Source: Hemiscyllium ocellatum (Eukaryota). Taken from it: DNA of 63,647 nucleotides. The position numbers were made by a program, and so were the translations under genes. Location: contig NW_026869159.1 of the NCBI RefSeq assembly GCF_020745735.1, positions 124,001 through 187,647 on the forward strand, written 5' to 3'. Positions 5,445-63,530 of this stretch are shown here, one piece after another. Numbering within the stretch: the first letter of the stretch is position 1; each line of letters starts with the position of its first letter. The notes beneath the pieces are model-generated. The model was not told the origin of the DNA. It did not search any database and saw only the letters and a program-made list of their open reading frames with translations.

Positions 5445-6907
5445 TTTGTTTGCACACAGCGAGAGGTGTGAAGGGAGACATCACCTTGTTTAGTTCATCT
5501 CAGAACTTGCTCTGGGATATTGCATAAATGAAGACGTTGTTGCAAGAACTTAGTATCTGCAGATGTTCGTCGATTCTCTGGAGAATGAAATGTTGGTTAG
5601 TGAAATCCATGCCGCTGAAGTATACCTCAACTGCAAGCCGCACACAGGGGAAGCGTCCGACATAGGTGACCCTTAGATGGAGGAAGCTGAACGAGATGGT
5701 GAAGAGCAGTCTTATGGACCTCTTGCACTTGGCCTTCTCAGAGTTTCTGTGGCTCGCTGTGCCCCTGAGTCTGCTTCGGACACTGCTGGCCACCAATATG
5801 TATCTAACAGTCACAGCATTGAGCAGCAGAATAAGGAGGAATGAGACAATAGGCGTCAAGATGTGATTCAGCCAGTCATAGGATTTACATGCAGAGTTTA
5901 AGTACGAGTCTCTGAAGTCACAGAACCAGGACACCACGTCCACAATGTACAAGGGCTGGTAGACGAAGTAGGAAGGCAGGTTTTTGATGCATCTCATGAT
6001 ACAAACCACTCCGAAGAGCAGTGATGCAGTTTTTTTCGATTCAGTAACTTGTCTTCAGACTTCAGCAGTTAGTAACGACAAAACGGTCGATGGTGAATTT
6101 AACAGTTCGCCAGACTGAACCATCCCGGCTGGCATAGATCATCAGGGTGCGTACTGTACAGGTAGTGGTCGTGGACAGGGCACTGTGTCGAAAGTAAGTG
6201 TCGCCAGTCGCATTCAGGATGCACTCAGTGATGATCACAAGAAAATCACTCACTGTTGTCCTCATCAAGGAAAAGGTTGTGCACCCAGAAAGTCCGCACT
6301 GTCCTTGTGATATTATGATGATCGCTAGCAGGTTGACTGGGGGCAATTTAAATCTATTATCGAACTGACTTGAGTAATCACGAGATATACTTTTAATCCT
6401 TAAAATAATGACGTATCTGCAATAATTCTCTTCGGGATCATCGTGTCATCTGTGCATTAAAGTATCGAGCACCATGATAGCCCATTATTACAGACAATAG
6501 CAAAAAGAGCAGTTTGTCGTTTCAACAATATGACATAATTTAATTTTGTGTAGTTAATCTCATTATTATTCAGGCAATACCACGTATTGCAATTCACAAA
6601 CCAGTAATCTAATAACCGGCTATTCACTAATTGCTCAATTGAGCAGCTCAATAGATATAATGTTGCTGTGCACTGCAAACGCGTGCAAGTTAGTGTAACT
6701 TAATACTTTGCATATACATGGTGATTTGGCTGCGTTTCCTTCAGCGGTGACGATCAAAAGAAAAAAAAACGGCCATGAAATTTAATAGAAAATACTTTTT
6801 TGCACTTCTAAACAACTGCTTAGAATCTGTTACTTACCAGGGACACCGGTACTAGCAAGAGCTGAATAATACAGGGCATTGAACGAGACATTCGCTGGGC
6901 CATGCAT
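5445..6907 (-). pseudogene. GPR139/142-like class A GPCR pseudogene A (exon 1 6838-6907, exon 2 about 5445-6336); paralogue of the intact gene at 58046-59492
   Basis: Exon 1 MHGPANVSFNALYYSALASTGVP with phase-1 GT donor. Exon 2 VNLLAIII..SDFLVII..IDRFV..; two TGA stops and a +1 frameshift after DRF (6020-6065); premature TGA at 5500 after SSCNNVFIYAISQSKF. Confidence 0.93.
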
Positions 6908-8229
6908 CACTTGTTGTAAACTAATCGAAATCTCAAAACTCCTCGCTTGATCTCCGTGACATAAAGAAAAAGGTCTCTAATTTATACAATTTCAGAGTCT
7001 GGAGAGTGTCAATTGCATTCGAACATGTACCTTCGTTTCTGGTCCGGTGTCATGCCTGCTGTGTAACATTGGAATATTGCACAATTGCACACACGTAAAT
7101 CGAGAACAGCAACCTCCAAATTCTGAAGCCCCCTTCCACGTGTTTTGATTACTCCATCAAATAGAGTTCCTACTTCAATAGGTGAGCTTAGGTCTTATAC
7201 TTAATTTGAAGGACATCTCAGTCCTTCACTGCATTTTCCCCAATTGTTTCTATGTTTAGTTGTGAAAGTCGTGAAAGATTTTCCTTCTACGGTTTTGCTC
7301 TCTTAACATTCGTCTATAAGTAAATTTCAAAAAGTTGTTGGGTCTGTTTACCAATAATGGATGATATCTGAGGAGGAGTCCAGAGCATGAAAATCTTTTG
7401 GATGCTGAGAACAGAAAACTTCTTACATTGAAGGTTGATAAATTCCTCGGCCAAATCGGGTCCATTCCAGAGTCTAGCATGAGGTGGCTGAACAGACAAT
7501 GAGTGCACTGATGGTTACCACTGGAAATTCTCGAAATTCCAGAAAAGTGCCTGAGCATTATTGAAACAGAAGATAATATATCAACTCTATAAGAACGGTG
7601 AGATCAGAAAACAGGGGCCACAGTACTGTTGAATTCCAATTATAAGGAAATGCCAGGTCATATGTTGAAGGAGACGATAAGTAGACATTTCGTAACAATG
7701 GTATGTTTGACATGAGTCAATACAGAATTATACAGTAGAAGGACTGTTTGGCAAACCCACTGGAATTCGTTTTGTAGATGCTAATTGTAGCAGCGATTAG
7801 GCGAAACCAGCAGATGTGTTGTGTTTTCGTTATTTTGAAAGTTTTTGATAACATCCCATACAGGAAATCTGTAAATATATTGTAGAAAACGATGTTGATG
7901 TTAAGTTGCTGTGATTAATTAATGAGGAGAATTCAAATTGTAGAAGGGAATGGATTATCCTCAGGATGGTCAAATGTTATTAGTTGAAGTAAGAATCTGT
8001 GAGACAGAGCTTAGCAATTTATACGATGATTGTCTCAGTCATAGTTATTCAAAAATTGTTGATGTCATGAAACTAAGTGATAACTTATTTTGTGTAAGCC
8101 AAAGGGAGGCTTCAGTCCAGCTTAGACTGGATAATAATATTGGACTGTTAAACATTACACAGCAGCAAGTTGCATTCCAATAAATTTAATTGAAAAAACA
8201 AGGTTTTGGAGAGCTTCACCTTCGTCAGT

Positions 8230-9600
8230 TAGCTAGTGTGGCAGGATCATAGAACACAGAATTTACAGCAAAAGATCAAAGTATCACACAACTGATGCGA
8301 TGCATTAAAGAAAACTGGATTTCTGTTAAGTCTTTAATCCCTTATAATGGGGAAGTAGGTTTTGATTGATTAATATATAATTCCAGACCTGCTTTCAAGT
8401 CACAGTCCCGAGACAATTTGAGTTTTTTATTGTAAAAACAACAGTGACACCTCAGCTCAGACATTAACGATGTGTGGTTAGTGTCTGTCTGTGTCCGAAA
8501 GTTAAGTCAGTCTGGTTCTGTTTCCTAAGTAAGATTTTTCAAATGTCACATGGACTGACTGCCTACAAATTGTGTGTTTTAAGCAAAATAGAACGTATAT
8601 GCAAAGAAAATCTGCAAATGCAATTTCACCCCATAAATTTATATGTGCGTGTACATGGGTATGAGGGAGAGAGAGAGAACATACGTGTGGTGCAGAGAGG
8701 GAGACATTATGCATGGGTGTGTGCGCGCGTGCCTGCGTGTGTTTGATAGAGTGTGTGCCTGAGTGTGACAGAGTATATGCTTCTCAGATGGTGTGCTAAT
8801 GAGTGTGAGTGCATGAGTGTATGTGTCTGTGTCTGAGAGAAAGTATGTGATCGTGTGTCTGAGTGCACGTGTTTGTGTATTTTGGTGTGCGTTTGTGTGT
8901 GTGTGTGTGTGTGTGTGTCAGCGTATATCTGCAGTGGAGTACCCTGTGGTGTGACATGAACCCAAGACCCCGTTTGACGCTGATCTCATGAATACTGAGG
9001 TTGAATTTCAGCATCTGCTCCTCAAATCTGCGTTGCTGCGAAGCCGAGGTCTTCCTTGGAGGATAGACACCCGAAGATCCGAGGCTGATTCTCTGGACAC
9101 CTGAAGTGCTGGAAGTGGCCATTGCTGTCTGGCAATTGTTGTGTGGTATCAATTCATCTCTTGTTGCAACGTTCGCTTGGTCTCACCAATATATGCATCC
9201 TTTCTTCAGCGTTTGAGATAAAGAAGTTTGGCCGAGTCTCATGAATATCTGTCACGCACCAGGTGGGTAGTGTCCCCCCTTGTAATGATAATATATATTT
9301 CGACATTCTGACACGTCTTGCAGTGATTGTCGTGATAGGTTTGCATAACCAAACCACAGCTTGCAGAGAAATGCCTAGCCTTCGGACGACATTGAACTCA
9401 ACACCATGCAATCCCATTATGCCAACCACTGCAAAGCGTGTTGACAAAGATATTACAACTAAAAGTGCGGCCGGCACCCGCCAGGTGGACGGCACTTACT
9501 CATGTGACTCGCCCAACATCGTCTATCGCATAAGATGCAGGATAGGTTGCCCATAGACATGGTATTTTGGAGAGACCACACAGACTGAAATAGCAGAAAT
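8230..9600. mobile_element. Penelope-like element relic: GIY-YIG fragments head-to-head (minus about 8230-9310 with CA-rich tail; plus about 9310-9600)
   Basis: YSCDSPNIVYRIRCRIGCP on +; mirror GIY-YIG C-terminus (..EEQMLKFNLSIHEISVKRGLGFMSHHR) on -; (GT)n tail at 8690-8920. Confidence 0.8.
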
Positions 9601-10384
9601 TTTAATGAGACCTTCTGAGGACCAGTCACTGGACTGGAAATATCAACTCAGCTTTTTCTCCAAAACATTGAGAGACATGCTGAGTTTTTCTGGAAATTTA
9701 GTCTTGTGGTTAGCATATATTCCTGTTAATGCAGGAAAACGAAGTTCTGATGTAGAAACTGGGGCAGAATCTAATGATATCGTTACAATGTTCAATACTC
9801 CGAGGAATTCAACAGGAGAGTAAATGTAAAACATGCAGACTCAACAATAAACAGAATGCATCTTTACTGTGGACACAGTTCAAACACAGGGATTGGGTTA
9901 TGGATCTTCTTGAAGATCACGTTACTCTGCACAACATCCTGAACTGGAGACTGGAATAAGCAGATAAGACAGCCCTCGGAAAAGAAATAACGGCAAACAG
10001 GGAGACAGTGCTGACGGAAACGTGCAAGGAATGCTGTGAGAAAGGAGTGAAGAGATGGGAAAATGACATCAAGAGCAAAACAGTGAGGGAAAGAAATGAA
10101 TAAACAAAGGCGAACTGTGATGAGACCTGTGAGGATCGGAGGAAGCGTGACTGCAAACAAATCATAAGTTCGCTTCATGTCGAGAGTGAAATAATTTCCA
10201 ATATTTCTGCATTCTTTCAGGCTATGCTTCAGGTATCTGTACAGCAGGATATCATGCCTTATGCCGATTTATGACAGGTGTTTATTTTCGTCAGATTTCT
10301 GCATCGAATATAGATGGTAGTAATTCCCGCTAGGCCACACTGTTGAGAAAGAAAAAAAAAATGAAGTGACTTTCCAATCCTTCA

Positions 10385-11933
10385 TCATTTAAGGAATCTG
10401 GTGAGAGCAGTGAAGAGGTAAATCTGAACTTTCTTCATTTGTGTTTGAAACAAATTCTGAGAGAGTGTATATATGAAGACCTTGTTCCAGGAACTAAGTA
10501 ACTGGAGTATGTTGGTGCTCTCATCAAAGATGTACTCCAATTTACTTAAATCCAGTCCATCAAAGTCACTCTTAGCTCTCAGCCGCACATAGATAACAAT
10601 CGGGTATCCCATCCAAAATGAACAAAGGCTGGAATGTAAAGTACAAAGGCATGATCTTGATGCAACTCAGAACACAGACCAGTTCTATGACCAGTGATTC
10701 AGCCTTCTCTTTGCTGTATCTGGTCTTCTGTCTCTGGTAGCAGATGGCTGCGAAGCGACCGATGGTAAAGGCCACTGTCAGCCAGACCGAGCAATCCAGA
10801 GTAGCATTGACCAATACGATGCTAAGAGTGCACGCAGGAGTGGTGGACAAGACGTTTTCCCGAAAATAGATGCGGCTGATTCGGTTGAGGATGACGGCAG
10901 TAGTAATGACGAGGAAATCACTCACTGTAATTGCCACCAGGTAGTAGGTGATACACCTCGAGAAACAGCACCATCCTGGCAATAAGATTGTTATTGCAGA
11001 AAGTTGGCTGTGAAAAATCAAATGATAAATTACTAAGCTCAGTCCAAATATTGTCTGTCACCTCATGAAATATTTTACGGAACTGCCTTCAACTATCAGC
11101 TTGCCAATTCCAGTGTCTAGCTTTTCTGAAATCATTGACAATTATTAGACATCTAGTGTAGTATTAGACACGTAGTGCAGTATTAAACATCTAGCAATAC
11201 ACGTGATGAAGGAACAGCAGTCCGAAATCTTCTTATTTCAAACAAACCTGTTGGAAAATAACCTGGGCTACTGTCATGTCTGACTTTCTCCACCCCAGTC
11301 CAACATTGCACCATCACATCATCTGTCAATGTGATCAATCCAGGAAATGAAATCGCTCTCCAGTGACTGAGGTAATGTTAAGTAGCCACTTGTCCAATTC
11401 GGAATAACAGGAATAATGTGGTTTCCATGAACATATTCATATGAAGCACGGGCCATGCGTCATACCATATCATGTTAAATAATCCATCCTAAAATGGAAC
11501 AAATTTCATTTTTCTGAATTGGATTTGAATCGAATCTGTGATACTATTACAATTGAATATTCATGCATTGTCATTCACCACAGTTATCAGTTCCGTGTCT
11601 CATAGACGATCTTTCTCCAAGTCTTCAGCATTCAAAATTGAATAACGCAGTGCCCTTTATTATACTGAAATCGGAAGCAATTCATGATGATTTGCCGTAG
11701 CACAGATATTATTTCATGATGTATTATAGGGATTGGAGACCTGTGGATGTGCCTTAAAATCAAGGAGTTGCATGTTGAGAAAATGCTACCGAATTCTGGA
11801 AGGGAAAAGAATAAACTTCTGGAAAGACATGATGAGCTAATCGATTTTCTCGAACATCAGTAACACCAGGGCCAGCGATAGCTGCAACAATTGAATAGAA
11901 AATGAAGAATGGTGCAATGGCTGGCTCATGCAT
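10385..11933 (-). pseudogene. GPR139/142-like GPCR pseudogene B (exon 1 11867-11933, exon 2 10385-11007); paralogue of the intact gene at 34721-37106
   Basis: Exon 1 MHEPAIAPFFIFYSIVAAIAGP plus GT donor. Exon 2 has a 1-nt deletion just after the acceptor, DRF changed to GRF, and loss of about 275 nt (ECL2-TM6) at about 10600; ends ..FIYTLSQNLFQTQMKKVQIYLFTALTRFLK*. Confidence 0.92.
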
Positions 11934-11994
11934 CTTCGTTAAAAACTGCAGGATTTATTGTCGCCGTAGGGGTTTGGTGGTATCAAACCGAAAC

Positions 11995-13212: not shown

Positions 13213-13269
13213 ATTGAATCATTGTGTACCCCAAGACATATAACAGTGTGTTATAAGATATGAATGATA

Positions 13270-15949: not shown

Positions 15950-16560
15950 ACTAAATATCTCAGTTTCAGAAATGACAGCCAGATTACTGAGGCCCCTCGG
16001 AATCCCAGTAGCACACAAACCCACCAACACTCTCAAACAAAAACTAACAAACTAAAAGACCCACTACAACCCATGGACAAAACCAGCGTCATCTATAAAA
16101 TTCCATGCAAGGACTGCCCCAAACACTACGGCGGACAAACCGGAAGAAAGTTCGCCACTAGGATACATGAACACCAGCTAGCCACAAAAAGACACGACCC
16201 CCTCTCCCTCATAGCCGTACACACGGATGAAAAAAAAACGTTTCGACTGGGACAACACATCTATCCTGGGACAGGCTAAGCATCGACATGCCAGAGAATT
16301 CCTAGAAACCTGGCACTCCAACCCCAATGCCATAAGCAAGCACATAGATCTAGATGCCATCTATCAACCCCTCAGAAAACGAAAAGAAAATGACATCACC
16401 ACAAACCCCAGGAACCCCATCCAGGAGAAAGATTTGAAAAGAAAACAGGAGACAACAACTTCGCTTCACTTGGAGGTCGCCACTGATGATGTTACCTAGC
16501 CAGGTAATGAAACGTCTGGATATCAAATCTACAGTTCAGCGAGCAACCCTGCACCCGATA
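15950..16560 (+). mobile_element. Penelope-like element 3' fragment (GIY-YIG endonuclease plus pseudo-LTR)
   Basis: ORF 15893-16279 VIYKIPCKDCPKHYGGQTGRKFATRIHEH; continues FDWDNTSILGQAKHRHAREFLETWHS. Confidence 0.9.
16480..16519 (+). ncRNA. Minimal hammerhead ribozyme motif in a Penelope pseudo-LTR
   Basis: cca-CTGATGA-tgttacc/tagcca/ggtaat-GAAAC-GTC-tgg: intact core, stem II TTACC/GGTAA, stem I CCA/TGG, GUC cleavage triplet. Confidence 0.7.
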
Positions 16561-17204: not shown

Positions 17205-17208
17205 GTTT

Positions 17209-17271: not shown

Positions 17272-19559
17272 CATCTCTGTCTGTAATGTGAAAGCCTTTA
17301 TTCTGGAGAGACTTTTGAATGAATGACTTTCAACCTGATGAATAGGAGGCTCAGAATCTCTCTCTCTCTCCATCTGCGTGCCTGTTATTCCCTCTTCTGT
17401 TTAAAGTGATACAATGACACCACACCACTGTTTTGTGTTTGACATGATTCTGGCTCTTCAAGTATTTTCGTATTAGAATCATGTAACATTTCAATGTTAC
17501 TCGAATCGGTGCTGCAGTTACTTGCCTCACAGTAAGATTTTACTCTACTAAACTGGTTCTTGGGCTTTCTACAGCGCCCCAATCGTTTAATGGGGAAAAA
17601 CTTGGAGACTTTTAGAAAGGCCCAAAACACGTTCTTTATTTTGCATTTCCTAAACAAGCAGCATCAATTCATTTTAAGAATATATTTATAAATATTGAAG
17701 TTTTGCTTGAATATGTACGGTCAAAAGATGAACCATTTCAATTCTGGTTTGAATACGTCTCTGAGAGGAGCAATACACTGCAGAATTTGTGAGTTCTGTT
17801 TTCAACATTTTCACCTGGAATGAGCGTTTCACGTGGTCAAACTACGAGAAGAAGCAGTATCCCAGAAATCTCCAGCAGTTGTCACTGGCAAAGGCAGCCT
17901 TTTTACCCTTCCCTAATTGCCCTTTGAATTTTGTGCATTGCAAAATATATCCGGAGATTAATTAAGAATCAACCGCTTTGTCAGGAGACACATGCACACC
18001 AGGGAACTCTGGCAATACACTTCTAAACGATATCAAAGATTGTTTTACTTAACTCATATCAATTATTTACCGTATCACGTCCGCCATTAAATGAACTAGG
18101 TAATTCCAGGTTAACTGAATTGTCATTCGACTAGCCGCTCTGTCTGCAGAATATTAACCCGTGCAATTAATAAAATTGTTTGGAATATCAATCAGAAAAG
18201 TTCATCTTGGAATATTGTTAGTCAAATCCAGAGGAAATTCCAGCGCAATCATTCAAATCTGTGAATTTCAAGTTACAGATCAAGTGTAAATCTGTTACAA
18301 TCCTGATGTGGAACATAAATTCTAATGTAGAAATCCAAAATTCGAGGAAAGAACGAGAGTCAATCCAGCAAAATGCTTCGCAAGTTGAAACATAAAAAAA
18401 ATTGAAGTTGCATCAGAAATCAAGTAAACTGTTTACCGCGTTTTTAAGTCACTGGAGCAGTGACTTGTGCATCCCGCAAAGGGCCATCACTGTATGAAAA
18501 CACTTGCCCGACAAGATACTTTACGCCAGTGCTTTGAATTGATGCAATTCTAGTTTAAGTAGATTTTAATGATTTTAATGATGACGCAGAATCGACAGGT
18601 GAAAATGAGAGAAAAGCCTTACCAGACATTGATTATTGCAGCATGCACGAATGGACACATATTCGAGTCCTATGATATATGTTCCTATCAAGCAACAGGG
18701 CAAGCTTTTAGGTTAAATTGAGTCACGATTTGCTGTATTATAATCAAAGGCATCACTTGATGTACTCTGACTGGGCACATGGATTCGTTTAAAGTAATGC
18801 AAACTGAGTCTGGTTCCAGTGCAGTTATGTTTTTAAACAGATTCATGCAATATACATTATCATGATTTCAATGCCATGAACAAGACATACTTTCGTAATG
18901 GATATGCTATGAAAAGTCAATTTGAGTTCATGGTCCTAAGAAGAATGTTGGGAACATTGACATATTGGAATACAAAAAGAGCCATTCGGCTAATGTGAAT
19001 GCCCTCGAAAGAGCAATTTACCTTGGGTCAGTCGCCTTCCATAGAAGAGAACTATATTTATTTTTTTGAAATTTATTTTCCCTTTCTGAAAGTTTCTGCA
19101 GATCCTGCCTGCAACAGATTCTCAGTTAGATTCCCATAACATCTAAACTTCCTTTGTGTTGATTGAAATTATGATACCATTGTCCTTTCGTCTCCCATGT
19201 GCCTGAAATGTGTACGATTTGCTGCCAGCAAATCCTTACATCTGAGGGAACTGTTGCCTTCCTCCAGTCTATTCAGAGTCATTGTCATTTTAAACACTTA
19301 TTCTTCACCCGGATTCAAACTTTTCTTTTCCCAAGCAATTAGGCATAACCTTTCCTATATTTTGATGTTCCTGGTGTTCCTCATCACTGGGGAAATTCTT
19401 GAAATATTTTCTTGCCCCCTCTCAGAATTTCATAATTGTGACCATCGATGTAGATTTTGATTTCCCACGACACCCAGAAATGCAGAACCTCCAATTTTTC
19501 TGTATTTTATAAGTATTGGTAGCAAAGAGAGTTTTACATTTCCGCTATCTAACACAAAG

Positions 19560-24097: not shown

Positions 24098-24104
24098 TTT
24101 CAAT

Positions 24105-34720: not shown

Positions 34721-35619
34721 TTATTTAAAGCAATTAATGAGGGTGGCAAATGGGTAGATCAGAACATTCTTCAAATCCTCTCGAAACATATTCTGAGATA
34801 TTGTGTAAATGAAGACGTTGTTGCAGGAACTTAGTAACTGAAGTGTATTGGTTGCCTCTTGGAAGATATACCGAGGGTCACTGAAATCAAGGCCACCATA
34901 GTAACCCTCGGCTGTAAGCTTCGTGAAGATGAAATGTCCAACAAGAGGGGCCCACAGGAGGAGAAAACTGAAAGAGATAGCGAACAGCAGAATAATTGAC
35001 CTCTTGCGGTTCTCCATCTCTGAGTCATGCTGCTTCTCTGTGCCCCGGAGCCTCCTGCGGGCTCTGTTGGCCACTACGATCTGTCGTATGGTCAGGGCAT
35101 TGAGCAGCAGAATGGCAAAGAATGGGAGAAAAGGAGTATACATCTGGAAGAACCAATCATAAACCTGCCAAGCTGGCTGGATGTAGTAATTGGCTTTGAT
35201 GTTGCAAAACCAGGATATCCCATCTAAGACGTATATGGGTTCATAGATAAAGTAGAATGGGATGTTCTTGATGCAGCACAATGCACAAACTATCCCGATG
35301 ACCAATGACGCCATCTTCTCTGTGCAGTACCTGGTTTTCAATTTCTGGCAACAGATGGCCACAAAACGGTCGAAGGTAAAGGCAACTGTCAGCCAGACCG
35401 AACAATCCCAGATGGCAAAGACTACCACGATGCTGAGAGTGCATGCAGGAGTGGTAGACAAGACACTTTCCCGGAAGTAGAAGCGGCTGATTCGGTTGAG
35501 GATGACTGCAAAGATGATGACAAGAAAGTCTGTCACTGCGATCGCCACCAGGTAGTAGGAGATGCACCGGGAGAGACCGCACCGTCCTCGATATAGGACA
35601 ATGATTGCCAGCAAGTTGG
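34721..35619 (-). CDS. GPR139/142-like orphan class A GPCR gene C, exon 2 (intact; 322 aa with exon 1)
   Basis: Acceptor ctcacag|CC AAC TTG at 35619. Open frame with 7 TM segments, TM2 AVTDFL, TM3 TPAC..FDRFVAICC, ECL2 WFC, TM5 TPFLPF, TM6 LLLWAP, TM7 SSCNNVFIY, helix 8 FREDL. Confidence 0.95.
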
Positions 35620-37036: not shown

Positions 37037-37106
37037 CAGGGGCTCCAATAACTGCGAGAATTGAATAGCAAATGAGAAAGAAGGGGGCAATGACTGGCGC
37101 GTGCAT
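37037..37106 (-). CDS. GPCR gene C, exon 1 (MHAPVIAPFFLICYSILAVIGAP)
   Basis: 70 nt (23 codons +1), GTAAGA donor, phase matches exon 2; homologous to exon 1 of genes A, B and E. Confidence 0.9.
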
Positions 37107-38289
37107 CTTCGCTCAGAAACGGTAGCAGTTGGCTGTTGCTGTGGATGTTGGTTCTGTGACACATTCAAGTGGGCTCTCATATATTCTAAGTGATTGTCTC
37201 GAGAGTGACAATTAAATAACAGCATGCACCTTACTTACAGTTCGCTACACAAAGAGATTAACTCTCTGCTTCATGTCTTTAAACAAGGTGAATAATTGTA
37301 TTTGAGGTTGGGACAGGGTCGTTGGAATTGCTTTGTTTCGTCCAGGTCCACAAATCATGATGTTGTGTCTGCATCAGGTAGATCCGCCAATGGTGGACAT
37401 TGAGCTGAGCTCCTGCATCTGAACTTTCTTTCTACTTTGACTTCTGCTATTCCCCAGTTGATTAATCATTTAAAGCGTTGTCCTAGATTTTCATTTGCGT
37501 TCATTCATATATCTTTTAGTGACTGGTATTTTAACATTTTCATAAATTTGCGTTTGAACCTTTGGGAAACAAGCATGGGAAGTTAGCAAGCATGGGACGT
37601 TAATGTGGTAGTGGTTGTCAAATGCAAATCTTCTCCCACCCACTGAATCTGAAAAATCCTTAATTTAATCTGAACAATCAGAATGCCGAAAGGCCGTTTA
37701 AGTGCTGATGCTCCTGATCACAGTTGCTTGTTCAGGAACAGTTGATCAATGTCAATGTTTAATATAAGGACAGAAATATCAGATAAACGAGTGACTGGAA
37801 GCTGTTTTAAAATATGTTGCCAGGTTCATCAACAAAGCAGACTTGGTCAATGTAATGCAGAAATTCCACAGTGTCTGCAGGAACAATTGGGATGAACCTG
37901 ATTGAAGTGTTCACTGGGACAGACGTAGTGTAACTTTGAAAGAGATATATAAATTTGCAGTAGCAATTAAGACACGTAAAGTTGCAGTATGAACTAAAAC
38001 AAGGTCAAATCCAGTAAATAACGTGATTGCATAATGCCATTGACACTGTTCCAAGAAACAATAATTAAGATAGAGGATAATTTCATACATTAGTGACACA
38101 GAACATAAAACGTGACAGTTAAGCACCAGCCCTTCAGCACTCAATGTTGCGCCAACCGGTGGAACCAATCTGAAGTTCATCTAACCTTCCACATCCAATT
38201 TGGTTCCATATGCCTATCCAATGACTACTTAAATGCCCTGAAAGGTTGCGAATCCAGAACTGTTGCATGGGATGCGTTATACGCCCCCT

Positions 38290-52047: not shown

Positions 52048-52384
52048 ATGATGTTTCGAATTTGCAGTCTCCTCCTGCTGTTTTCCAAAGTGATCTCCAA
52101 GGAGGGAATTGGAGAAGGCGAAGTGAAGAAACATCCTCTGTGGATGGTTGTTACTGAAGTGGGAATTGTGTCCATGAATTGCTCCTTTGCCACTTCATTT
52201 AACACAGTGCGTTGGTACAGACAGCTCCCGAATCAGCCACCCCAGCATTTGGTGATGGCCAAAAGGGAAGATACTTCATCCGAGAGAATTACGGCTTCAA
52301 TCAATGGAGACTACAAGACCAGTATCCTGACAATGAAAGACGCCAGACTTAATGACTCCGCCATCTACCTCTGTGCAATGAGGG
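52048..52384 (+). CDS. TRAV: T-cell receptor alpha(/delta) variable segment #1; leader and V in one continuous exon
   Basis: MMFRICSLLLLFSKVISKEGIGE-GEVKKHPLWMVVTEVGIVSMNC..VRWYRQ..ILTMKDARLNDSAIYLCAMR; conserved C23, W41, C104; immediately followed by a 23-RSS. Confidence 0.92.
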
Positions 52385-52423
52385 CACAGTGTCACAAAGA
52401 GAGGGCGAGGCTTTACTAAAACT
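52385..52423 (+). promoter_or_regulatory. 23-bp-spacer recombination signal sequence
   Basis: CACAGTG (52385-91) + 23 nt + ACTAAAACT (52415-23). Confidence 0.93.
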
Positions 52424-55115: not shown

Positions 55116-55167
55116 ATGTTACCTGGAGCTCTTTGTTTACTCCTCTCAACTATAGGTCTTCTCACTG
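55116..55167 (+). CDS. TRAV: Leader exon of TCR V segment #2 (MLPGALCLLLSTIGLLT-G)
   Basis: 52 nt (17 codons +1), hydrophobic, G|GTACGT donor; phase 1 matches the acceptor at 55622. Confidence 0.85.
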
Positions 55168-55622
55168 GTACGTTGAAAGCTTGTCTACTTATGTGTGTCA
55201 GCTCTTTGCTGGGACTTACGTTTACTCGATCAATTTGAGTGATGCAGAAGTAAGAATACATTCTCCTAAATAAAACTATTTAGATCTAAGCTTTCCCCAA
55301 CAATGAGCAGATTTCGGGAGAAATTAGCAAATTTACGTGAGTGAATGGCAGTGGAATAGTTAGACGGCAAATTCAGGCAGGACTGAGGCCATTGAGATAA
55401 TTCGACAGAACGGAGTGTTTTATATTCACCAATATATTTCAGTTTTCCTTTCACGTTGTGGGAGATGAAATGGGGAATGATCTCCTCATATGAAATTGAT
55501 CCCAGTCCAAATTCCCTGATTTTTTTCTTTTTCGGGTTGTTGATGAAGGTAAACTGGCTGAGTATATGAGATAAGAATGTTGAAGTACCTCATTAAATTT
55601 CTATAATTCTTGGCTCTTACAG

Positions 55623-55923
55623 GACTTTGTCATGGCGATTCTGTCTCACAAACTCCGCCTGAAATCACAGTAAACGAGGGTGATGATGCCCTGTTGTTCT
55701 GTAAGTACTCTACAATAAACAGCAATCCTGCTCTGTTCTGGTACCGTCAACCTTCCAACGGGTCCATGAATTTTCTGCTGCAGATAAACCAATATAGCCA
55801 GAAAACGAGTTTTCTATCAGACAAGCTCTCCTGGGACTTTGACCATGTGAACCGCACTATGCAGCTGAAGGTTTTGAAAACAGTACTCACAGACACTGCA
55901 GTGTATTACTGCGCACTGAGTCC
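55623..55923 (+). CDS. TRAV: T-cell receptor alpha/delta variable segment #2, V exon
   Basis: cttacag| GLCHG-DSVSQTPPEITVNEGDDALLFCKYS..LFWYRQ..MQLKVLKTVLTDTAVYYCALSP; open frame with canonical C/W/C. Confidence 0.95.
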
Positions 55924-55962
55924 CACAGAGACTCAGAACTGGGCTGACCGTGTACAAAAACT
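55924..55962 (+). promoter_or_regulatory. 23-bp-spacer recombination signal sequence
   Basis: CACAGAG (55924-30) + 23 nt + ACAAAAACT (55954-62). Confidence 0.93.
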
Positions 55963-58045
55963 CTCGGAGCGTCTAGGCAAACAGTGAGATCAGGAGTGGA
56001 TCTAATGTGGTTCCGGAGTTCAAGGTGATAGCTGATACTTATCATTCGGACACAACACTTTAATTGGTATAAATCTATTATTGAACGGAATGCCGTCAAT
56101 TTCGAGAACAGAAAACAACTAATTTATTTTACATCCTTCATGGTGTTCCAAAATGTTTTATTGTTATAGGAATGAAGTGCGATAGAAAATTCAGGGACTC
56201 GTTTTGATCCAGCAAAATCTTCAGGCAAAACAGGGAACTGCAGTATCCTGTTTGAGATACAATGACCTGTCACAAGATTCTAGTAATGAGACACTGGAAC
56301 AACCTCTACAACGTTAAACACATTGTGGGTTGTTGCGTACTGCCATTGCGCCTTCATGATAACAGCTCCAAAATGATATGTTGTCGATTCGCAGGTCCAG
56401 AATAACGCAGACCTGTCGATGTTAAGTGTTGAAAAAACTGTACTGTGCAGCATACAGATACACCACAGGAAAGATTAAAGTCGTGCAAATTGCCAACTCA
56501 TCGAGATATGCAAACAAAAAAGTGTTTTGTCAAAGTCCACTTCCTGTACAGAACTTTCAAACATTATATCAGAACAATCGTTAATTGATATTTCATATTA
56601 TTGTCTGTACCATAACAATAAAATAACGTGCTGTGCATGCTGAAGATCTGAAACTAAACTCAAGTTGCTGGCGAAACTCAGGAGATCTGGCAGCAAGCTG
56701 TTGCGAGAAAGCAGAGTAAGAATTTTGAGACCAGTGACTCTTCATCAGAAAACTGCGTGTTCCAGTTGACTGTGATAGGAACACTCGAATTAGGAGCAGG
56801 AATAGGGGCTTCGACGCTTTAAGCCTGCTCCGCCTTATAATAAGCTAATTGTTGATTTGTTTTGTGGACTCAGCTCCACTTACCCGTGCTCTCAACGATA
56901 AGAACATGGTAAATTAAAGGAACGTGTTCAATTCACCTGTTGCATTACATTTTAATTTGCATGAATATTGAAACTTCTATAAATCCTAGCCCTATTACAG
57001 CATGAATAATACGCAAGAAACTTTGGTGGATACGTTCACTTCCGAAGAATGTATGACACACATTTTTAAAAAAATTAAATTATTAGCCTGACTAAAAACA
57101 GATAACTAATAATGTAGCTGTCCTCAATAGTTGAAATTGAGGAGCAATTGTTTGTCCTCATGATAATATCGGTTTCATTGCAAAAAAAAGCAGAAACATT
57201 AAATTTCTTTGATTGAAAATTTAGACTTAATTTTCCGAAACCACCACCAGATTGTGTCCTTAGTCCATTCACAATATTCACACAGGGAAAGGAGAGGAAT
57301 AACAATCAGGACCTGGCAGATGTGTTAATTGTCTGTAGTACAACATCGTTTCTGTTTGCTTTTTAGAATATTGATCAAAACGCAATGTTAGGAAATCATG
57401 AAAATAACCTTGATTTTCTTGTGGTTAAAGGAACGAGAGTTACGTTTGACTTTAGGTCCAGGATATATGTCTGCATGTCAAGGTTTGCTGTGTAGAGGCT
57501 GGGACGGGGTGGAGACGCCGAGATCTCTGGAGCTGCAAAAAGTAAATCTGAGATTTAACAGGAGAGGCATGGATTGTATGATGCAGTGAGAACATGAAAA
57601 CTGTCGAGAACATTTTTTAGGATGTAATGAGCTGTTCATCGGGTCTATGTCAAAGTAAAAGGCAACGTGAGCGATTCAAATAAATAGATGCAATAGTCCT
57701 GAGCACGAATGATGGAGAAGGAGGAAGGAAGAATAGAATGGCGACTGAGAGGGAAGGAGGGAAGCAGCAAAATAGATGAATATCAAATGACTTAGCCGAG
57801 ACCACTAGAAGTATAATGCAGTCATCAGAGGCAAAGAAGACAATTTCGCCTCACATCCATAAAAACACTACTTCGGCTGGTTTTTATTTTCTGTTTGTCT
57901 TAATAACAGGCAATGTAAAGGCTGGAAAAGGAACTGGTCATATCTCCGGTAGTGAAGCACGAAACGCACAAACATTATTTAGTTTTTAGTAGGAGAGAAT
58001 ATTTTATGCACTGAGTCACTCTGATCGATGGAACACGTCAAAACA

Positions 58046-58941
58046 TTATTTGCACACAGCGAGAGATGTGAAGGGAGACAACATCACTTTCTTCAGTTCA
58101 TCTCGGAATTTGTTCTGGGATATTGCATAAATGAAGACGTTGTTGCAGGAACTTAATATTTGCAGCATGTTCGTCGTTTCTTGGAGAATAAACTGTGGGT
58201 CAGTGAAATCTAAGCCGCTGAAATATGCCTCACCTGTAACCCGCACATAGAGGAAGCGCCCGACATAGGTGACCCATAGAAGGAGGAAACTGAGCGAGAT
58301 AGTGAAGAGCAGTATGATGGACCTCTTGCGGTTGGCCATTTCTGAGTCTCCGTGGCTCGCCAATCCCCGAAGCCTCCTTCGGGCACTGCTGGCTACCAAG
58401 ATGTACCTGACAGTCATGGCATTGAGCAGTAGAATAAGAAGGAACGGGAGAATAGGCGTCAAGATGTGATTCAGCCAGTCATAGGATTTCCATGCAGGTG
58501 AGTTATAGTACGTGTCTCTGAAGTCACAGAACCAGGACCTCCCGTCCACAATGTACAAGGGCTGGTAGACGAAGTAGGAAGGCAGGTTTTTGATACAGCT
58601 CAGGACACAAACTACTCCAATGAACAGTGATGCAGTTTTCACAGTGCAGTACCTGGTCTTCATATTCTGGCAGCATATGGCCACGAAACGGTCGATGGTG
58701 AATGCCACGGTCAGCCAGACTGAGCCATCTCGGCTGGTATAGATCATCACGGTGCTGACTGCGCAGGCAGTGGTCGTGGACAGTGTGCTGTGTCGGAAAT
58801 AAATGCCACCGATCCGATTCAGGATGCACCCAGTGATGATCACAAGAAAATCACTCACTGCTATCCCCACCAAGTAATAGGTGGTGCACCCAGAGAGTCC
58901 ACACCGTCCTCGCAATAGTATGACGATCGCCAGCAGGTTGG
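58046..58941 (-). CDS. GPR139/142-like orphan class A GPCR gene E, exon 2 (intact; 321 aa with exon 1)
   Basis: Acceptor ttcccccag|CC AAC CTG at 58941. Open 7TM frame: AVSDFL, TTAC..IDRFVAICC, WFC, TPILPF, LLLWVT, SSCNNVFIY, NKFRDEL. Confidence 0.95.
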
Positions 58942-59422
58942 CTGGGGGAAATTGCGAAGTATTATTGAACGGACCTGATTAATCACTAGATATACTTATA
59001 ATCTTTAAAATAATGACCTACCTGCAATGATTTTCTTCGGGATTATCATGTAATCTGTGCATGAGAATATCGAACGCAACGATAGCGTATTATTCCATAC
59101 ACCAGTAATTTCCAGCATTACAACTGAATTTAATTTTGTGCAGTTATTCTGATTAATATTCAGGCAATGCTACATATTACAATTCCGAACTCAATGATGT
59201 AATAATCAATTGCTCCATAATTGTTCAATATTACATTTTGGATAGAATGTTGCTGTGTACTTCAGAGGTTGCAATTGAGGAAAGCTCAATGTTTGACACA
59301 TGTATAGGGACCTGCGCTCAATTCCTTCAGTCGTGAAGATCAGAAAAAAATGTCATTCCTGAAATTTAATACAAAAGATTTTCTTTCAACTAACAAACAT
59401 ATATTTGGAATCTGTAACTTAC

Positions 59423-59492
59423 CAGGGACACCAATAGCAGCAAGAGCTGGATAGTAAATGGCATAGAAAGGGCCACTCGCTGGGCCATGCAT
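59423..59492 (-). CDS. GPCR gene E, exon 1 (MHGPASGPFYAIYYPALAAIGVP)
   Basis: 70 nt, GTAAGT donor, phase 1. Confidence 0.92.
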
Positions 59493-60829
59493 CACTTGTT
59501 ATAAACTAATGGAAATCACAAAACTTCTCACATGAGCTCTGTGACACAAACAACAGGTCTCTAATTTATAATGCTTCAGGATCTCGAGAGTGTTAATTAA
59601 GTTTCAACATGTACCTTTGTTTCAGTCTGGCGAAAAAACCTAATTACTCACTATTTCATGCTTTCTATGTAAATTGTAATGTTACACAATTGCACACACG
59701 TAAACTGAGAATAGCAACCGGCAAATTTAAAGCCCCCTTCCAAGTATTTTAATTTCTCCATCAAATGGATTCCCGATTTCAAAACATGAGCTTATGTCTT
59801 TTGCGTAATTTGAAGGAACTCTCAGCCCTTCTCTGCGATTTTCTCAATTGTTTCGTCTCTTTAGTTGTGAAATTAGTTAAAGATTTGCATTCTACTGTTA
59901 TTCTGTCTTAACATTTATCTATATTTAAAGCTGAAAAGTTTGAAATTCGGTTTACCAATGATGGATGACATTTGAGAAGCATGGTATCTGATACCAGCGC
60001 ATGAAAACTTTTTAGCAAATGAGAACAGAAAACTTCTTGTAATAAAGATTGATAAATCCCTCGACCAAATGGAGTCCATTCCAGAGTCTTGAATGATGTG
60101 GGGAGAAAAAAGTGATTGCACTGATGGTTATCCTTGGAAATTCGAGAAATTTCGGAATGGTTCCTTAGGTTTAGAAAGTAGGGAAAACAACCCAACTATT
60201 TAAGAAGAGTGGGATAAGAAAACAGCCACCAAAGACATGTTGAATGTTGGTTATAAGAATAAAAGCCACGTCATATAATGAAGGAAACGATAAGTAGACA
60301 TTTTGAAATATGATATGATTGAGATGACTCAATATGAAGTTATAAAAGGGAATGAATGTTTGGCAAAACCATTGGAATTCGTTTTGTGGATGCTAATTTT
60401 AGCACTAATAAGGGACAACCAGTGTGTGCAATGTATTTTCGGACATTAGAAAGTTTTGATAACATGCCAGACTGATGAGGTCTTACGAGATTGATGTTAA
60501 GGTGCTGTGATGAAGTAATGAGAAGAAATCAAACAGTAAAAAGGAATGAGTTATTTTAAGAATGGCCGACTGTTAATAGTTGTATGTCTCAACAATGAGT
60601 GATGCAGAGCGTGACAATCAAATAATGATTGTGTGAATCATAGTTTTTGGAAACTCATTAATATAATTAAACTAAGTGGTAGCTTAATTCACGTAAGCTG
60701 CAGGTAGGCTTTTCAGTCGAGTCCAGTCAGAATAATTATATCGTAATGTCAAAAAATCGCACAACAGCAGGTTGCAATCCAACAAGTTTATCCGGAAGGA
60801 CGAGCTTTTGGTGAGCTGCTCCTTTGTCA

Positions 60830-62790
60830 GCTAGTGTGGCAGGATCATAGAACACAGCATTTACAATAAAAGATCAAACTGTCAAACGACTGATGCGATG
60901 GATTGAACAAAATCAGATTGCTGTTAAGTCTTTAATCACTAACAATGAGGATACAGGTTTCGAATATTGATATGTATATCCCAGAACTGCTTTCACGTCA
61001 CAGTCCCGATATAAATTAAGGTTTTATTAGAAAAAAGTGACACCTCTACTTAGACATTAAATGTGTGCGGTTAGTGTCTGTCTGTATCCCAAGCTGAAGT
61101 CCGACTACATTGATTTCCAAAGTAGCAACTTTCAAATACCACATGAACTGATTGCCTACAGATTGTGTATTTTTGAACAAAATAGAATAAACTTGCAAAG
61201 ACAAATCTGCAAATATAATTTCAACCCATAGACTTACATGTGCGTGTGCACGGGTGTGAGGGAGAGAGAGACAGAAAACATGTGTGTGTGGGAGAGGGAG
61301 AAAGTGTGTGTGTGTGTTGTGTGTGTGTGTGTGTATGCGTGTGCGCTCTGGATGCAGTGTGTGCGTGTTGGTGACAGAGTATATGCCTGTGAGAAGATGC
61401 GCACATATGTTTGAGTGTGAATGTGTGTGCGAGTGTAATTCAGAGAGCGTGTGTGTGAGGGAGGATCTGTGTGATTGTTCGAGTGTGATCCTGTGTCCGA
61501 ATGTATGTATATGCTGATTTGCTTGTGTGTGAGTGTCTGTTTCAGGGTGTACAATATAGGGGAGTACCCTGTGGTGTGACATGATCCACGATCCCTTTTG
61601 AGGATGTCCTCATTAATACCGAAATTGGCTATCAGCGTCTTCTCGACAACCCTGCATTTTTCCGTGACCCAAACTCCTCCATGATGCATGGTCACTTGAA
61701 GATCCGAGGGAGATCCTCCTTGACCCCGAAGTGCTCCACGCCTGGAAGGGAGCTCCCCATCTGGAAATGGTTGTGTGGTTCCATTCACCCATTCTCTTAG
61801 CACCCGCGTGGTCTCACCAATATATGATGCCACAGGGATCCCAGCTTGCAACATTTGAGGTAGACAATTTTGGCTGAGTCGCATGAATATCTGCCACACA
61901 CCAGGTGGGTGGTGTCCGCACTTGTGATGATAGTATCCATTGTGACATTCTGACACATGTTGCAGTGGTTGTCATCACAGATTTGTATAAACAAACCATT
62001 GATCGCAACAAAATGCCAAGCGTCCAGGATGACATTGAACACAACACCAAAGCACACCATTGCAAGACGTGTCAGAGCATCGACTTGGATAGTACAATTA
62101 AACGTTGGCCACCACCCATCAAATACGTGGCAGTTACTCATGTGATTTGGCCAACATCGTCGCTCTCATATGTTGCAGGCTAGGTTGCTCTCATGATAGT
62201 ATAATGGCGAGGCCACACGGATGCGAAGACAACCAATAAATGAACACTGTGCAGCAATCGCCAAACAGGGATGCTGCCTCTCAGTTGGAGAATACTTCAC
62301 CCGTGAAGTATATTCTGCTTTGGATCTTCACGTGACCATCCTCCAAGACAGAATGTGGATGTGTAACAACACAGAATAGTCCAGCAGAGGCTGATCACCG
62401 AATTCAGTATCAATGAGAACGACCTGAACCGGGATGTTGGGTTCATGTCGTACTCCAAGGGACGCCACTACACTGTACGCCCTTATACGCACACTCGCAC
62501 ACTCACACAGACCCTCTCTTACGAACATGTTCTCTCTCAGGCACATGCTCTCTCAGACACACACAAACACATGCATCTACACATGCACATTCAAACGTGC
62601 ATCATCTCACAGGCAAACACTCCAATAAACTCGCCCACACACTATCAAGCACACACGCAGACACTCTCACAGGTAGATCTCATACACATGCACGAACACA
62701 CGCTTGTATGTATATGGTGTGAATTTATATTTGCAGATCTGTAGTTGAAGACACGTTCTATTTTGTTCGAATAGAACAGAATATGCCGGC
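60830..62790. mobile_element. Penelope-like head-to-head GIY-YIG relics with CA-rich tails (minus about 60830-61960; plus about 61960-62790)
   Basis: YIGETTRVLRE on -; HCKTCQSIDLDSTI on +; same inversion as 8230-9600. Confidence 0.82.
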
Positions 62791-62794
62791 AAAC

Positions 62795-63530
62795 ATCCCA
62801 AATCCAGACTACCAAGGCAGTCCTGTCTTCGAACCTAAGTGTAGAGGAATCGTCTGACATAAAAGCTCCACAGGAATACAAAGCTGTTAGACATTGGGAA
62901 CAGAAGAACAATGGAACAATTGTGCTTGATCATCTCGTTGTCTTCACTATGCAGAGCTTCAGAACCTTTTGTCTGCCCTTTGGCCTCTATGATGATGCTA
63001 ACGGTAAGGGCGGTGAGCAGTAGAACGATAATGAACGGGAGTTAAGATATATATGGTCATGGTATCGGTAGATCTGCCAAGCAAGCGAGGTGTAGAAGCT
63101 TGTCTTGATGACATAGAGAGAAGGCATCCCTTCCAGTATAAGCAAGGGATGTGAGACAAAGTAAAATGGTGCGTTCTTGATGCAGAACAAGGAGCAGATC
63201 CCTCCCATGAGGCGCAAAGCAGTTTTGTCGGTGCAGTTTTTGCTGCTCAGGCTCTGGCAGGAGATGACCACAAAACATTGAATCGTGGAGGTTACTGCAA
63301 GCCAGACTTATCCATTTCGGTTGATGTAAACCACCACTGCACTAAACACACACTCACTAGTGTATTAGACAGGATAGTGTATCTATAGTAAATGCCGGAG
63401 ATTCTATTCAGAATGCATCCAGTGATAATAACAAGGAAAGCAGCGATAACTATCGCTATGAGATCGTAGGTAATGCAATGCGAGGGTCTACACTGACCTC
63501 GGGATAGCATTATGATTGCCATCAAGCTGG
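62795..63530 (-). pseudogene. GPR139/142-like GPCR pseudogene D (exon 2 only; exon 1 presumably beyond the window; C-terminus lost)
   Basis: LMAIIMLSRGQC..AFLVIITGCILNRISGIYY..CIKNAPFYF..SLAWQIY..PFIIVLLLTALTV..CSIVLLFPMSNSFVFLW; frameshifts; original acceptor AG appears mutated to AT. Confidence 0.88.

What the first reader, a model, noticed from the sequence alone, without database searches (positions are those of the whole stretch)
5445..63530. Expanded orphan GPCR array interleaved with RSS-flanked TCR V segments
Seen: five paralogous two-exon GPR139/142-like genes (A, B, C, E, D) surround two intact TRAV/DV segments with 23-RSS. All share a ~70-nt exon 1, a phase-1 intron, a very short N-terminus, DRF and an NNVFIY TM7 motif. 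Gene E ends 2.1 kb from the RSS of V #2. Established: tetrapods have single GPR139 and GPR142 amino-acid-sensing receptors, and mammalian TRA/TRD has olfactory receptors at its V-distal edge. Inference: in sharks a different, lineage-expanded GPCR family occupies that position. It may be an undescribed chemosensory or immune-sensing receptor repertoire linked to the TCR locus.
Basis: partly seen in the sequence, partly recalled or inferred. Interest (0 to 1): 0.8.

Follow-up and report, generated by a model that had tools for sequence, protein, structure and literature searches.

The report
Orphan GPCR genes among shark TCR-Vs
In a shark genome, two working and three dead copies of a large, unstudied receptor gene family lie between T-cell-receptor V gene segments; the mix is real, but it looks like long-standing neighbourhood, as with smell-receptor genes in the mammalian TCR-alpha locus, not shared function.

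Summary
The observation largely holds. The window carries five minus-strand paralogues of a two-exon class A GPCR. It also carries two plus-strand TCR alpha/delta-type V segments with 23-bp-spacer RSSs; gene E ends 2,084 bp from the RSS of V2.

Only genes C (322 aa) and E (321 aa) are intact. A, B and D are pseudogenes, so the claim that all five share DRF and NNVFIY is wrong for B and D.

"GPR139-like" is only a label: human GPR139 scores 33.8 bits at about 22% identity. The family has 103 clusters (50% identity) at E<=1e-30. It occurs in sharks, rays and a chimaera, with distant single relatives in newts, coelacanth and a teleost.

The intact copies are under purifying selection (dN/dS 0.20) and share a conserved promoter-like block.

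Close family members sit on 10 contigs in Hemiscyllium ocellatum but concentrate on one scaffold in several other species.

The most likely reading is a birth-and-death receptor array sharing a duplication-prone neighbourhood with TCR V segments. Chemosensory or immune roles are untested.

The scan already noted the same GPCR/TCR-V mix on other pieces of this genome. I found no paper describing it.

The parts
34721..35619 (-). GPCR gene C, exon 2 (TM1 C-terminal half to stop); intact
   Evidence: Open frame, Pfam 7tm_1 E 5.8e-20. With exon 1 it gives 322 aa, 95% identical over 322 columns to the H. ocellatum protein P0001. AF2 model pLDDT 85.7.
37037..37106 (-). GPCR gene C, exon 1 (70 nt, ATG plus 23 codons plus 1 nt; phase-1 donor GTAAG); intron 1,417 nt
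37153..37241 (-). Conserved upstream block of gene C with a TATA-like element 77 nt before the ATG; candidate core promoter
   Evidence: It aligns with the matching block of gene E at about 71% identity, although C and E flanks are otherwise unalignable.
58046..58941 (-). GPCR gene E, exon 2; intact
   Evidence: Pfam 7tm_1 E 2.7e-20. With exon 1 it gives 321 aa, 97% identical to the H. ocellatum protein P0032.
59423..59492 (-). GPCR gene E, exon 1 (70 nt, phase 1); intron 481 nt
59538..59626 (-). Conserved upstream block of gene E with TATAAAT at -78 from the ATG; candidate core promoter
5449..6907 (-). GPCR copy A, pseudogene (exon 1 6838-6907, exon 2 5449-6336): two in-frame stops and a frameshift near 6040
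   Evidence: Sister of E in the tree. Part of the 5.8-kb A/E duplication block.
10400..11933 (-). GPCR copy B, pseudogene (exon 1 11867-11933 with a 3-nt deletion; exon 2 remnants 10400-11007): 1-nt deletion at the exon 2 start, about 96 aa (TM4 end to TM6) deleted, GRF for DRF
62799..63529 (-). GPCR copy D, pseudogene: stops, two frameshifts, QCF for DRF, TM7 missing; exon 1 not in the window
52048..52384 (+). V1, TRAV/DV-type V segment; leader and V domain in one uninterrupted ORF
   Evidence: Pfam V-set E 5.7e-11. Among the best PDB matches TCR alpha chains predominate. ORF shown. 68% identical to C. punctatum P0285, which starts with the same leader.
52385..52423 (+). 23-RSS of V1 (CACAGTG, 23-nt spacer, ACTAAAACT)
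55623..55923 (+). V2, TRAV/DV-type V exon (after an AG acceptor, phase 1). Leader exon uncertain; candidates 55116-55167 or 55465-55561.
   Evidence: Pfam V-set E 3.8e-13. Best PDB matches are TCR alpha chains, E 5e-15. 67% identical to C. punctatum P0121. Leader candidates.
55924..55962 (+). 23-RSS of V2 (CACAGAG, 23-nt spacer, ACAAAAACT)
   Evidence: Read.
17769..17852 (-). FR3-only relic of a V2-like segment (77% nt identity); no RSS
3762..9584 (.). Duplication block holding copy A, about 73% identical to 56455-62221 (the block holding gene E). V2 lies just outside the block.

Best explanation
The window is a stretch of a shark TCR alpha/delta-type V region. Members of a large, cartilaginous-fish-expanded class A GPCR family lie in it, antisense to the V segments. 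Each GPCR gene is a separate two-exon unit with its own conserved TATA-type upstream block. The family turns over by tandem or segmental duplication and decay: here there are 2 live genes, 3 pseudogenes, and one old 5.8-kb duplicate block. The live genes encode signalling-competent 7TM receptors under purifying selection. The extracellular (ligand-side) helix halves vary more than the G-protein side. The GPCR/V interleaving is best explained by both gene sets living and duplicating in the same unstable neighbourhood, like OR genes among mammalian TRAV segments and trypsinogen genes in TRB. It is not explained by a functional tie to T cells. Shown: gene structures, intactness, family size and spread, selection, and V/RSS anatomy. 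Inferred: the neighbourhood explanation and receptor competence.
For: Five paralogues and their lesions. Intact 322-aa and 321-aa products match annotated H. ocellatum proteins at 95% and 97%. Pfam 7tm_1. Confident 7TM model with an ECL2 hairpin that matches peptide-type class A receptors. In the 62 family rows of the alignment, D and R of DRF, W6x48, N7x49 and the ECL2 Cys are invariant, and Y7x53 and the TM3 Cys nearly so. dN/dS between C and E is 0.20. In the A/E block, exons are 81-84% identical against 73-77% for intron and flanks. C and E share an upstream block although their flanks are otherwise unalignable. Extracellular helix halves have entropy 1.10 against 0.79 for intracellular halves, p=0.001. 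The window genes fall in three old subclades, each with partners in the protein set: a whale-shark partner for A/E, a bamboo-shark partner for B/C, and so far only an H. ocellatum paralogue for D. So the array is old, not a recent burst. The A/E duplication block stops short of V2. Mammalian precedent: PMC2275272.
Against: The scan's unchecked notes report repeated co-occurrence of this family with TCR V segments on several other pieces of the same genome. That could reflect more than chance neighbourhood, for example co-amplification as a cassette or shared chromatin. No expression data were available, so a T-cell or thymic role is not excluded. Linkage of this window to J and C segments was not seen directly.
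Confidence: 0.7

Rival explanations
1. The family is a so-far unrecognised chemosensory receptor repertoire of cartilaginous fish (olfactory, taste or solitary chemosensory cells). The TCR linkage would still be incidental.
For: The evolutionary style resembles chemoreceptors. There are 103 clusters (50% identity) at E<=1e-30. Members form tandem arrays with a high pseudogene share, 3 of 5 here. Gene structure is compact and the ligand-side helix halves vary more. Papers report very few ORs in sharks (PMC6368271 title and abstract; PMC8455134). An acidic residue at 5x43 in 45 of 62 members could bind a basic ligand group; that is my inference.
Against: There is no expression evidence. [quoted passage not shown] Family members are rather similar to each other, 55-69% identical, with dN/dS 0.2. 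The fold and ECL2 hairpin resemble peptide receptors. The Pfam OR model is below its cutoff.
Confidence: 0.25
2. The GPCRs are immune-sensing receptors functionally tied to the TCR alpha/delta locus through shared regulation or T-cell expression.
For: Physical interleaving here and, by the scan's unchecked notes, on other pieces. Some automatic names of relatives are GPR15-like, and GPR15 and chemokine receptors appear among the fold matches.
Against: V1 and V2 have their RSS facing genes E and D. A deletional join to downstream J segments would therefore remove those GPCR genes from the rearranged chromosome (inference). Each GPCR gene has its own conserved promoter-like block. Family members also lie on at least 10 contigs, including four of 116-168 Mb. 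The fold matches are generic for class A. The mammalian analogues (ORs, trypsinogens) have no T-cell role.
Confidence: 0.05
3. The apparent mix is an assembly artefact: a chimeric join, or an uncollapsed haplotype that inflates copy number.
For: Genes C and E each have a 95-97% identical counterpart, both on one 6.18-Mb H. ocellatum contig. That could be an allelic or duplicated scaffold. The window holds a 128-N gap at 4353-4480.
Against: The single gap lies inside the A/E duplication block, far from the V/GPCR junctions. V2 and gene E are 2.1 kb apart in ungapped sequence. The five copies are 40-75% identical, so they are old paralogues and not haplotigs.
Confidence: 0.03

Closest known systems
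Olfactory receptor genes interspersed with TRAV at the 5' end of the mammalian TRA/D locus (PMC2275272)
   Same: A class A GPCR multigene family is interleaved with TCR alpha/delta V segments, and both evolve by duplication and loss.
   Different: The GPCR family is different: it is not an OR (Pfam 7tm_4 is below its cutoff). The genes have two exons with a split TM1. Their position relative to the locus edge, and conserved flanking genes such as METTL3, SALL2 and DAD1, were not seen here.
Trypsinogen genes intermixed between TRBV and TRBC in the TRB locus (PMC2275272)
   Same: Unrelated genes lie between V segments and the rest of an antigen-receptor locus, so they are liable to deletion on rearrangement.
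   Different: A different gene class and locus; only an analogy for passive co-residence.
GPR139 / GPR142 (vertebrate aromatic amino-acid-sensing orphan receptors)
   Same: Human GPR139 is the only solved structure matched at E<1e-5. Both lack Pro in the NPxxY motif. Position 3x33 is aromatic, W6x48 is kept, and N7x38 is mostly kept (PMC5430874).
   Different: The match is only 33.8 bits at about 22% identity. H187(5x43) is mostly Asp and R244(6x51) is mostly Tyr. P6x50 is mostly Thr. The N-terminus is far shorter. There are hundreds of copies instead of one each.
Amphioxus and lophotrochozoan 'GPR139-like' or FMRFamide-receptor-like orphan expansions
   Same: They are the next-best sequence relatives outside vertebrates, at 26-30% identity and E 1e-15 to 1e-22. 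They are also lineage-specific expansions.
   Different: No orthology is established. Those proteins are longer (400-500 aa), and their ligands are also unknown.
Single 'GPR139-like' genes of newts and axolotl, coelacanth and a teleost (P0213, P0230, P0240)
   Same: They are closer to the shark family (147, 110 and 100 bits to gene C) than the newt and coelacanth proteins are to human GPR139 (53 and 70 bits; the teleost was not compared). They are probably the bony-vertebrate side of the same family.
   Different: Not seen as expanded in the hits looked up; 27-37% identity; the position-specific motifs differ.

Membership tests
Class A (rhodopsin-like) GPCR | Seven-helix fold matched by Pfam 7tm_1 above its cutoff | tested here: met
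   72.3 and 73.4 bits against a cutoff of 30.5. AF2 model with pTM 0.84; the exon-2 query starts within TM1. TM-scores 0.65-0.76 to solved class A receptors.
Class A (rhodopsin-like) GPCR | E/DRY motif at the end of TM3 and a TM3-ECL2 disulfide pair | tested here: met
   D and R are invariant and F is present in 58 of 62. The ECL2 Cys is present in 62 of 62 and the TM3 Cys in 60 of 62.
Class A (rhodopsin-like) GPCR | Canonical CWxP (TM6) and NPxxY (TM7) motifs | tested here: not met
   W6x48 and N7x49 are invariant and Y7x53 nearly so (61 of 62). But 6x50 is Thr in 49 of 62 (Pro in gene C), and 7x50 is V, T or I, never the usual Pro except in 1 of 62. This is a variant motif, as in GPR139.
GPR139/GPR142 orthogroup | Close sequence similarity or orthology to GPR139 or GPR142 | tested here: not met
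   33.8 bits, E 2e-7 to human GPR139. 21-23% identity to GPR139 and 19% to GPR142 in fold alignments. Invertebrate orphan receptors score higher. A joint tree with true GPR139 and GPR142 was not built, because no stored sequences were available.
GPR139/GPR142 orthogroup | Agonist-pocket residues F109(3x33), H187(5x43), W241(6x48), N271(7x38) and R244(6x51) (PMC5430874) | tested here: not met
   3x33 is Y or F in 57 of 62, W is in 62 of 62 and N7x38 in 56 of 62. But 5x43 is Asp in 45 of 62 (Phe in gene C), and 6x51 is Tyr in 47 of 62 (Leu in gene C). Mapping comes from the alignment; counts.
TCR alpha/delta V gene segment | V-set domain with Cys23, Trp41 and Cys104, and best similarity to TCR alpha/delta V regions | tested here: met
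TCR alpha/delta V gene segment | RSS with a 23-bp spacer directly 3' of the V coding end | tested here: met
   V1 has a consensus heptamer and a 7/9 nonamer. V2 has a 6/7 heptamer (CAC kept) and an 8/9 nonamer. Both have 23-nt spacers.
TCR alpha/delta V gene segment | Linkage to TRAJ/TRDJ and TRAC/TRDC, and use in rearranged transcripts | not testable with these tools
   There is no J or C segment in the window. The scan's notes place a NAR-TCR cassette 23-27 kb before the window; I did not check this.
Vertebrate chemosensory GPCR repertoires (OR/TAAR type) | Large tandem arrays with birth-and-death turnover | tested here: met
Vertebrate chemosensory GPCR repertoires (OR/TAAR type) | Expression in chemosensory neurons; sequence membership of OR or TAAR families | not testable with these tools
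   No expression data. Pfam 7tm_4 scores 18.1 bits against a cutoff of 27, so it is not an OR by sequence.

The most novel reading that the evidence does not exclude
The cartilaginous-fish 'GPR139-like' family could be the missing large chemoreceptor repertoire of sharks, rays and chimaeras. These animals have very few ORs. On this reading the family was amplified inside and around the TCR alpha/delta V arrays because that region is a duplication hot spot. It would be tuned to basic or aromatic small ligands through an acidic 5x43 and an aromatic 3x33.
Probability: 0.2. Interest if true: 0.8.

Novelty: new variant of a known kind. Interest (0 to 1): 0.45.

Why it matters
Sharks are known for a tiny olfactory-receptor repertoire. 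A family of roughly a hundred or more divergent class A receptors is annotated only by an automatic and misleading name. I found no paper on it, so it is an obvious candidate for an unstudied sensory or neuropeptide system. Its residence inside TCR V arrays parallels the OR/TRAV mix of mammals with a different GPCR family. That suggests antigen-receptor V regions repeatedly act as nurseries for unrelated multigene families. For annotation, the result also corrects the label: these are not GPR139 orthologues.

Tried and rejected
1. Cross-species synteny by DNA failed. The look-up of encoding contigs returned no DNA and no neighbouring genes for four homologues, because the shark assemblies are too large.
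2. I tried to map TCR V proteins to contigs. Searches with V2 and V1 each found one C. punctatum protein on a 2-4 kb contig, which is useless for linkage.
3. A scan for J segments found no credible J with a 12-RSS.
4. An exact consensus RSS search gave zero hits. A relaxed scan was needed.
5. Rfam gave nothing.
6. The bacterial promoter/terminator scan is irrelevant to a vertebrate and was ignored.
7. Seven literature queries on GPR139 or GPCR expansion in sharks and on shark TCR locus maps found no description.
8. I rejected the idea that V segments were co-duplicated with the A/E GPCR block in this window. The block starts about 490 bp beyond the V2 RSS, and no V2-like sequence lies at the matching place near A.
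9. I rejected filing the family as GPR139/142 (see the membership test).
Full report
**What is in the window.** A tblastn search of the two long GPCR ORFs against the window finds five copies, all on the minus strand. They lie at about 5.4-6.9 kb (A), 10.4-11.9 kb (B), 34.7-37.1 kb (C), 58.0-59.5 kb (E) and 62.8-63.5 kb (D).

Alignment of the upstream regions shows a short first exon in A, B, C and E. It holds the ATG, 23 codons and one extra base: 70 nt in A, C and E, and 67 nt in B. It ends at a GT donor. Exon 2 begins after a conserved pyrimidine tract and AG. Its length is 1,417 nt in C, 481 nt in E, 501 nt in A and 859 nt in B.

Splicing gives open products of 322 aa (C) and 321 aa (E). 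These match annotated Hemiscyllium ocellatum proteins over their whole length at 95% (P0001) and 97% (P0032), which supports the exon-1 model.

**State of the five copies.**
- C and E are intact.
- A has two in-frame stops and a frameshift near 6040.
- B has a 1-nt deletion at the start of exon 2, has lost about 96 residues (end of TM4 to TM6), and reads GRF instead of DRF.
- D has stops and two frameshifts, reads QCF instead of DRF, has no recognisable TM7, and its exon 1 is not in the window.

The array is 2 live genes and 3 dead ones.

**The V segments.**
- A motif and RSS scan finds two plus-strand V domains.
- V1 (52048-52384) is followed by CACAGTG, a 23-nt spacer and ACTAAAACT (52385-52423).
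- V2 (V exon 55623-55923) is followed by CACAGAG, a 23-nt spacer and ACAAAAACT (55924-55962).
- Both match Pfam V-set. The best solved-structure matches of V2 are TCR alpha chains, and TCR alpha chains predominate among those of V1.
- Each has a counterpart at about 68% identity in Chiloscyllium punctatum.
- The stop codon of gene E (58046) is 2,084 bp from the end of the V2 RSS, as reported.
- A further FR3-only V relic lies at 17769-17852 on the minus strand.
- No J segment is in the window.
- The scan's own notes place a NAR-TCR cassette and its supporting V-delta 23-27 kb before the window. I could not check this. If true, the window lies inside a TCR alpha/delta V region and not in an orphon cluster.

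**What the receptor is.**
- *Fold.* Exon 2 of C and of E matches Pfam 7tm_1 at 72-73 bits. An AlphaFold model built on a 69-sequence family alignment is confident (pLDDT 85.7, pTM 0.84). It shows the helices from the end of TM1 through TM7, a beta-hairpin ECL2 and helix 8.
- *Fold matches.* Fold searches return peptide-type class A receptors: cholecystokinin, ghrelin, galanin, neurotensin, neuromedin U and GPR15. GPR139 ranks only 22nd in the PDB search (15th in the Swiss-Prot models) and has 21-23% identity.
- *Distance to GPR139.* By sequence, human GPR139 is the only solved chain below E 1e-5, but at only 33.8 bits.
- *Pocket residues.* I mapped the GPR139 agonist-pocket residues of PMC5430874 through that alignment. 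The family keeps an aromatic residue at 3x33, W6x48 and mostly N7x38. It has Asp at 5x43 where GPR139 has His, and Tyr at 6x51 where GPR139 has Arg.
- *Family hallmarks.* These are DRF, W6x48 followed by Thr instead of Pro at 6x50, and N7x49 without the Pro of NPxxY.

This is therefore a distinct family. "GPR139-like" is an automatic label, not an orthology statement.

**Size and spread of the family.**
- The word-indexed search returns 1,891 proteins. The best 120 are almost all named cartilaginous-fish proteins: sharks of several orders, skates and rays.
- The exhaustive search of 50%-identity representatives gives 103 clusters at E<=1e-30, then a sharp drop.
- Look-ups show a chimaera member (Callorhinchus, 47% identity).
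- Outside cartilaginous fish there are relatives in newts and axolotl, coelacanth and one teleost at 27-37% identity.
- The newt and coelacanth proteins score better against gene C (147 and 110 bits) than against human GPR139 (53 and 70 bits).
- The next relatives are amphioxus, crustacean, mollusc and brachiopod orphan receptors.

The family therefore predates the chimaera/elasmobranch split and is not shark-specific, but it is greatly expanded in cartilaginous fish.

**Selection and age.**
- C and E differ by dN 0.23 and dS 1.18, a ratio of 0.20.
- Their flanks and introns no longer align. Two exceptions remain: exon 1, and a block of about 90 nt upstream of it that carries a TATA-like element about 78 nt before the ATG. 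That block is also present in A. I read it as a conserved core promoter.
- A and E lie in a 5.8-kb duplicate block (3762-9584 and 56455-62221, about 73% identical). Within it the exons are 81-84% identical, against 73-77% for intron and flanks.
- In a FastTree phylogeny of 128 sequences, the window's copies fall in three well-supported old subclades. E and A group with a whale-shark protein. C and B group with a bamboo-shark protein. D groups with another H. ocellatum protein.
- Across the family, the extracellular halves of the helices are more variable than the intracellular halves (entropy 1.10 against 0.79 bits, p=0.001).

This is the pattern of a birth-and-death receptor array whose live members are constrained.

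**Is the TCR linkage meaningful?** I used contig length as a proxy for contig identity.
- The 18 H. ocellatum proteins among the best 120 hits lie on 10 contigs, four of them 116-168 Mb long. More distant subfamilies lie on further chromosomes. The family is therefore not confined to one locus.
- The close relatives are nevertheless concentrated. All 10 whale-shark hits are on one 11.7-Mb scaffold. All 5 basking-shark hits are on one 65-Mb chromosome. In C. punctatum 7 of 11 are on one 76-Mb chromosome, and in Heterodontus 8 of 13 are on one 59-Mb chromosome.
- Whether those chromosomes carry TCR alpha/delta could not be tested. No DNA or neighbouring genes could be fetched for shark assemblies, and V proteins are almost absent from the protein collection.
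- The scan's notes report the same GPCR/TCR-V mix on several other pieces of this genome. They also report arrays of the family described without V segments. These are leads, not evidence.
- In this window the A/E duplication did not carry a V segment.
- V1 and V2 point their RSS toward E and D. A deletional join to downstream J segments would excise those GPCR genes (inference).

Together with the mammalian precedents of ORs among TRAV and trypsinogens in TRB (PMC2275272), the most economical reading is shared residence in a duplication-prone region.

**Known or new?** The genes are auto-annotated in RefSeq. Seven full-text queries found no description of the expansion or of GPCR genes inside shark TCR loci. 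They covered the catshark sensory atlas, the whale-shark gene-family study, a shark chemoreceptor survey and recent TCR-locus papers. Function remains open. The chemosensory idea is attractive because sharks have few ORs, but it has no support yet. [quoted passage not shown]

**Verdict.** The finding repeats what the scan has already noted elsewhere in this genome.

Noticed in passing
window 52048-52384 (+): V1 encodes its leader and V domain in one uninterrupted ORF, with no leader intron, yet keeps a germline 23-RSS. The C. punctatum protein P0285 (68% identical) begins with the same leader in one ORF, so the intron-less layout seems conserved. This is unusual for V segments.
   Followed up: partly
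window 37153-37241 (-), 59538-59626 (-), about 6950-7040 (-): A block of about 90 nt with a TATA-like element about 78 nt before the ATG is conserved among GPCR genes C, E and A, although C and E flanks are otherwise unalignable. It is a candidate family-wide core promoter and includes a TTAATT-type motif.
   Followed up: partly
window 17769-17852 (-): FR3-only relic of a V2-like segment, 77% nt identity, in the opposite orientation to V1 and V2, without an RSS.
   Followed up: yes
window about 21400-24100: G-rich stretch (GC 0.58, GC skew up to 0.71) of degenerate units of about 39 nt and 20 nt. It produces long spurious Pro/Ser-rich ORFs on the minus strand.
   Followed up: partly
window 34721-37106 and 58046-59492, against H. 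ocellatum proteins P0001 and P0032: Genes C and E, 23 kb apart here, each have a 95-97% identical annotated counterpart, and both counterparts lie on one 6.18-Mb H. ocellatum contig. This indicates either a recent large segmental duplication or a diverged allelic scaffold.
   Followed up: no
window 32350-32772 (+), 45651-46301 (+), 38100-39578 / 45103-46616, 15964-16372 / 25251-25450 / 42683-43037: Retroelement debris lies between the genes. It includes an LTR-type RNase H fragment (Pfam E 4e-18), a weak RT fragment, inverted copies of a 1.5-kb repeat, and a thrice-repeated ORF family with no Pfam match.
   Followed up: partly
family alignment A3, gene C exon-2 residues 156, 223, 224: Most family members have Asp at 5x43, Thr at 6x50 and Tyr at 6x51. 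Gene C itself departs from its family at all three (Phe, Pro, Leu), which hints at a different ligand or activation switch within the family.
   Followed up: no
window 55116-55167 and 55465-55561 (+): There are two alternative phase-1 leader exons for V2. The distal one encodes a cleaner signal peptide with a GTACGT donor and a 455-nt intron. The proximal one would leave only a 61-nt intron. Which is used is undecided.
   Followed up: partly
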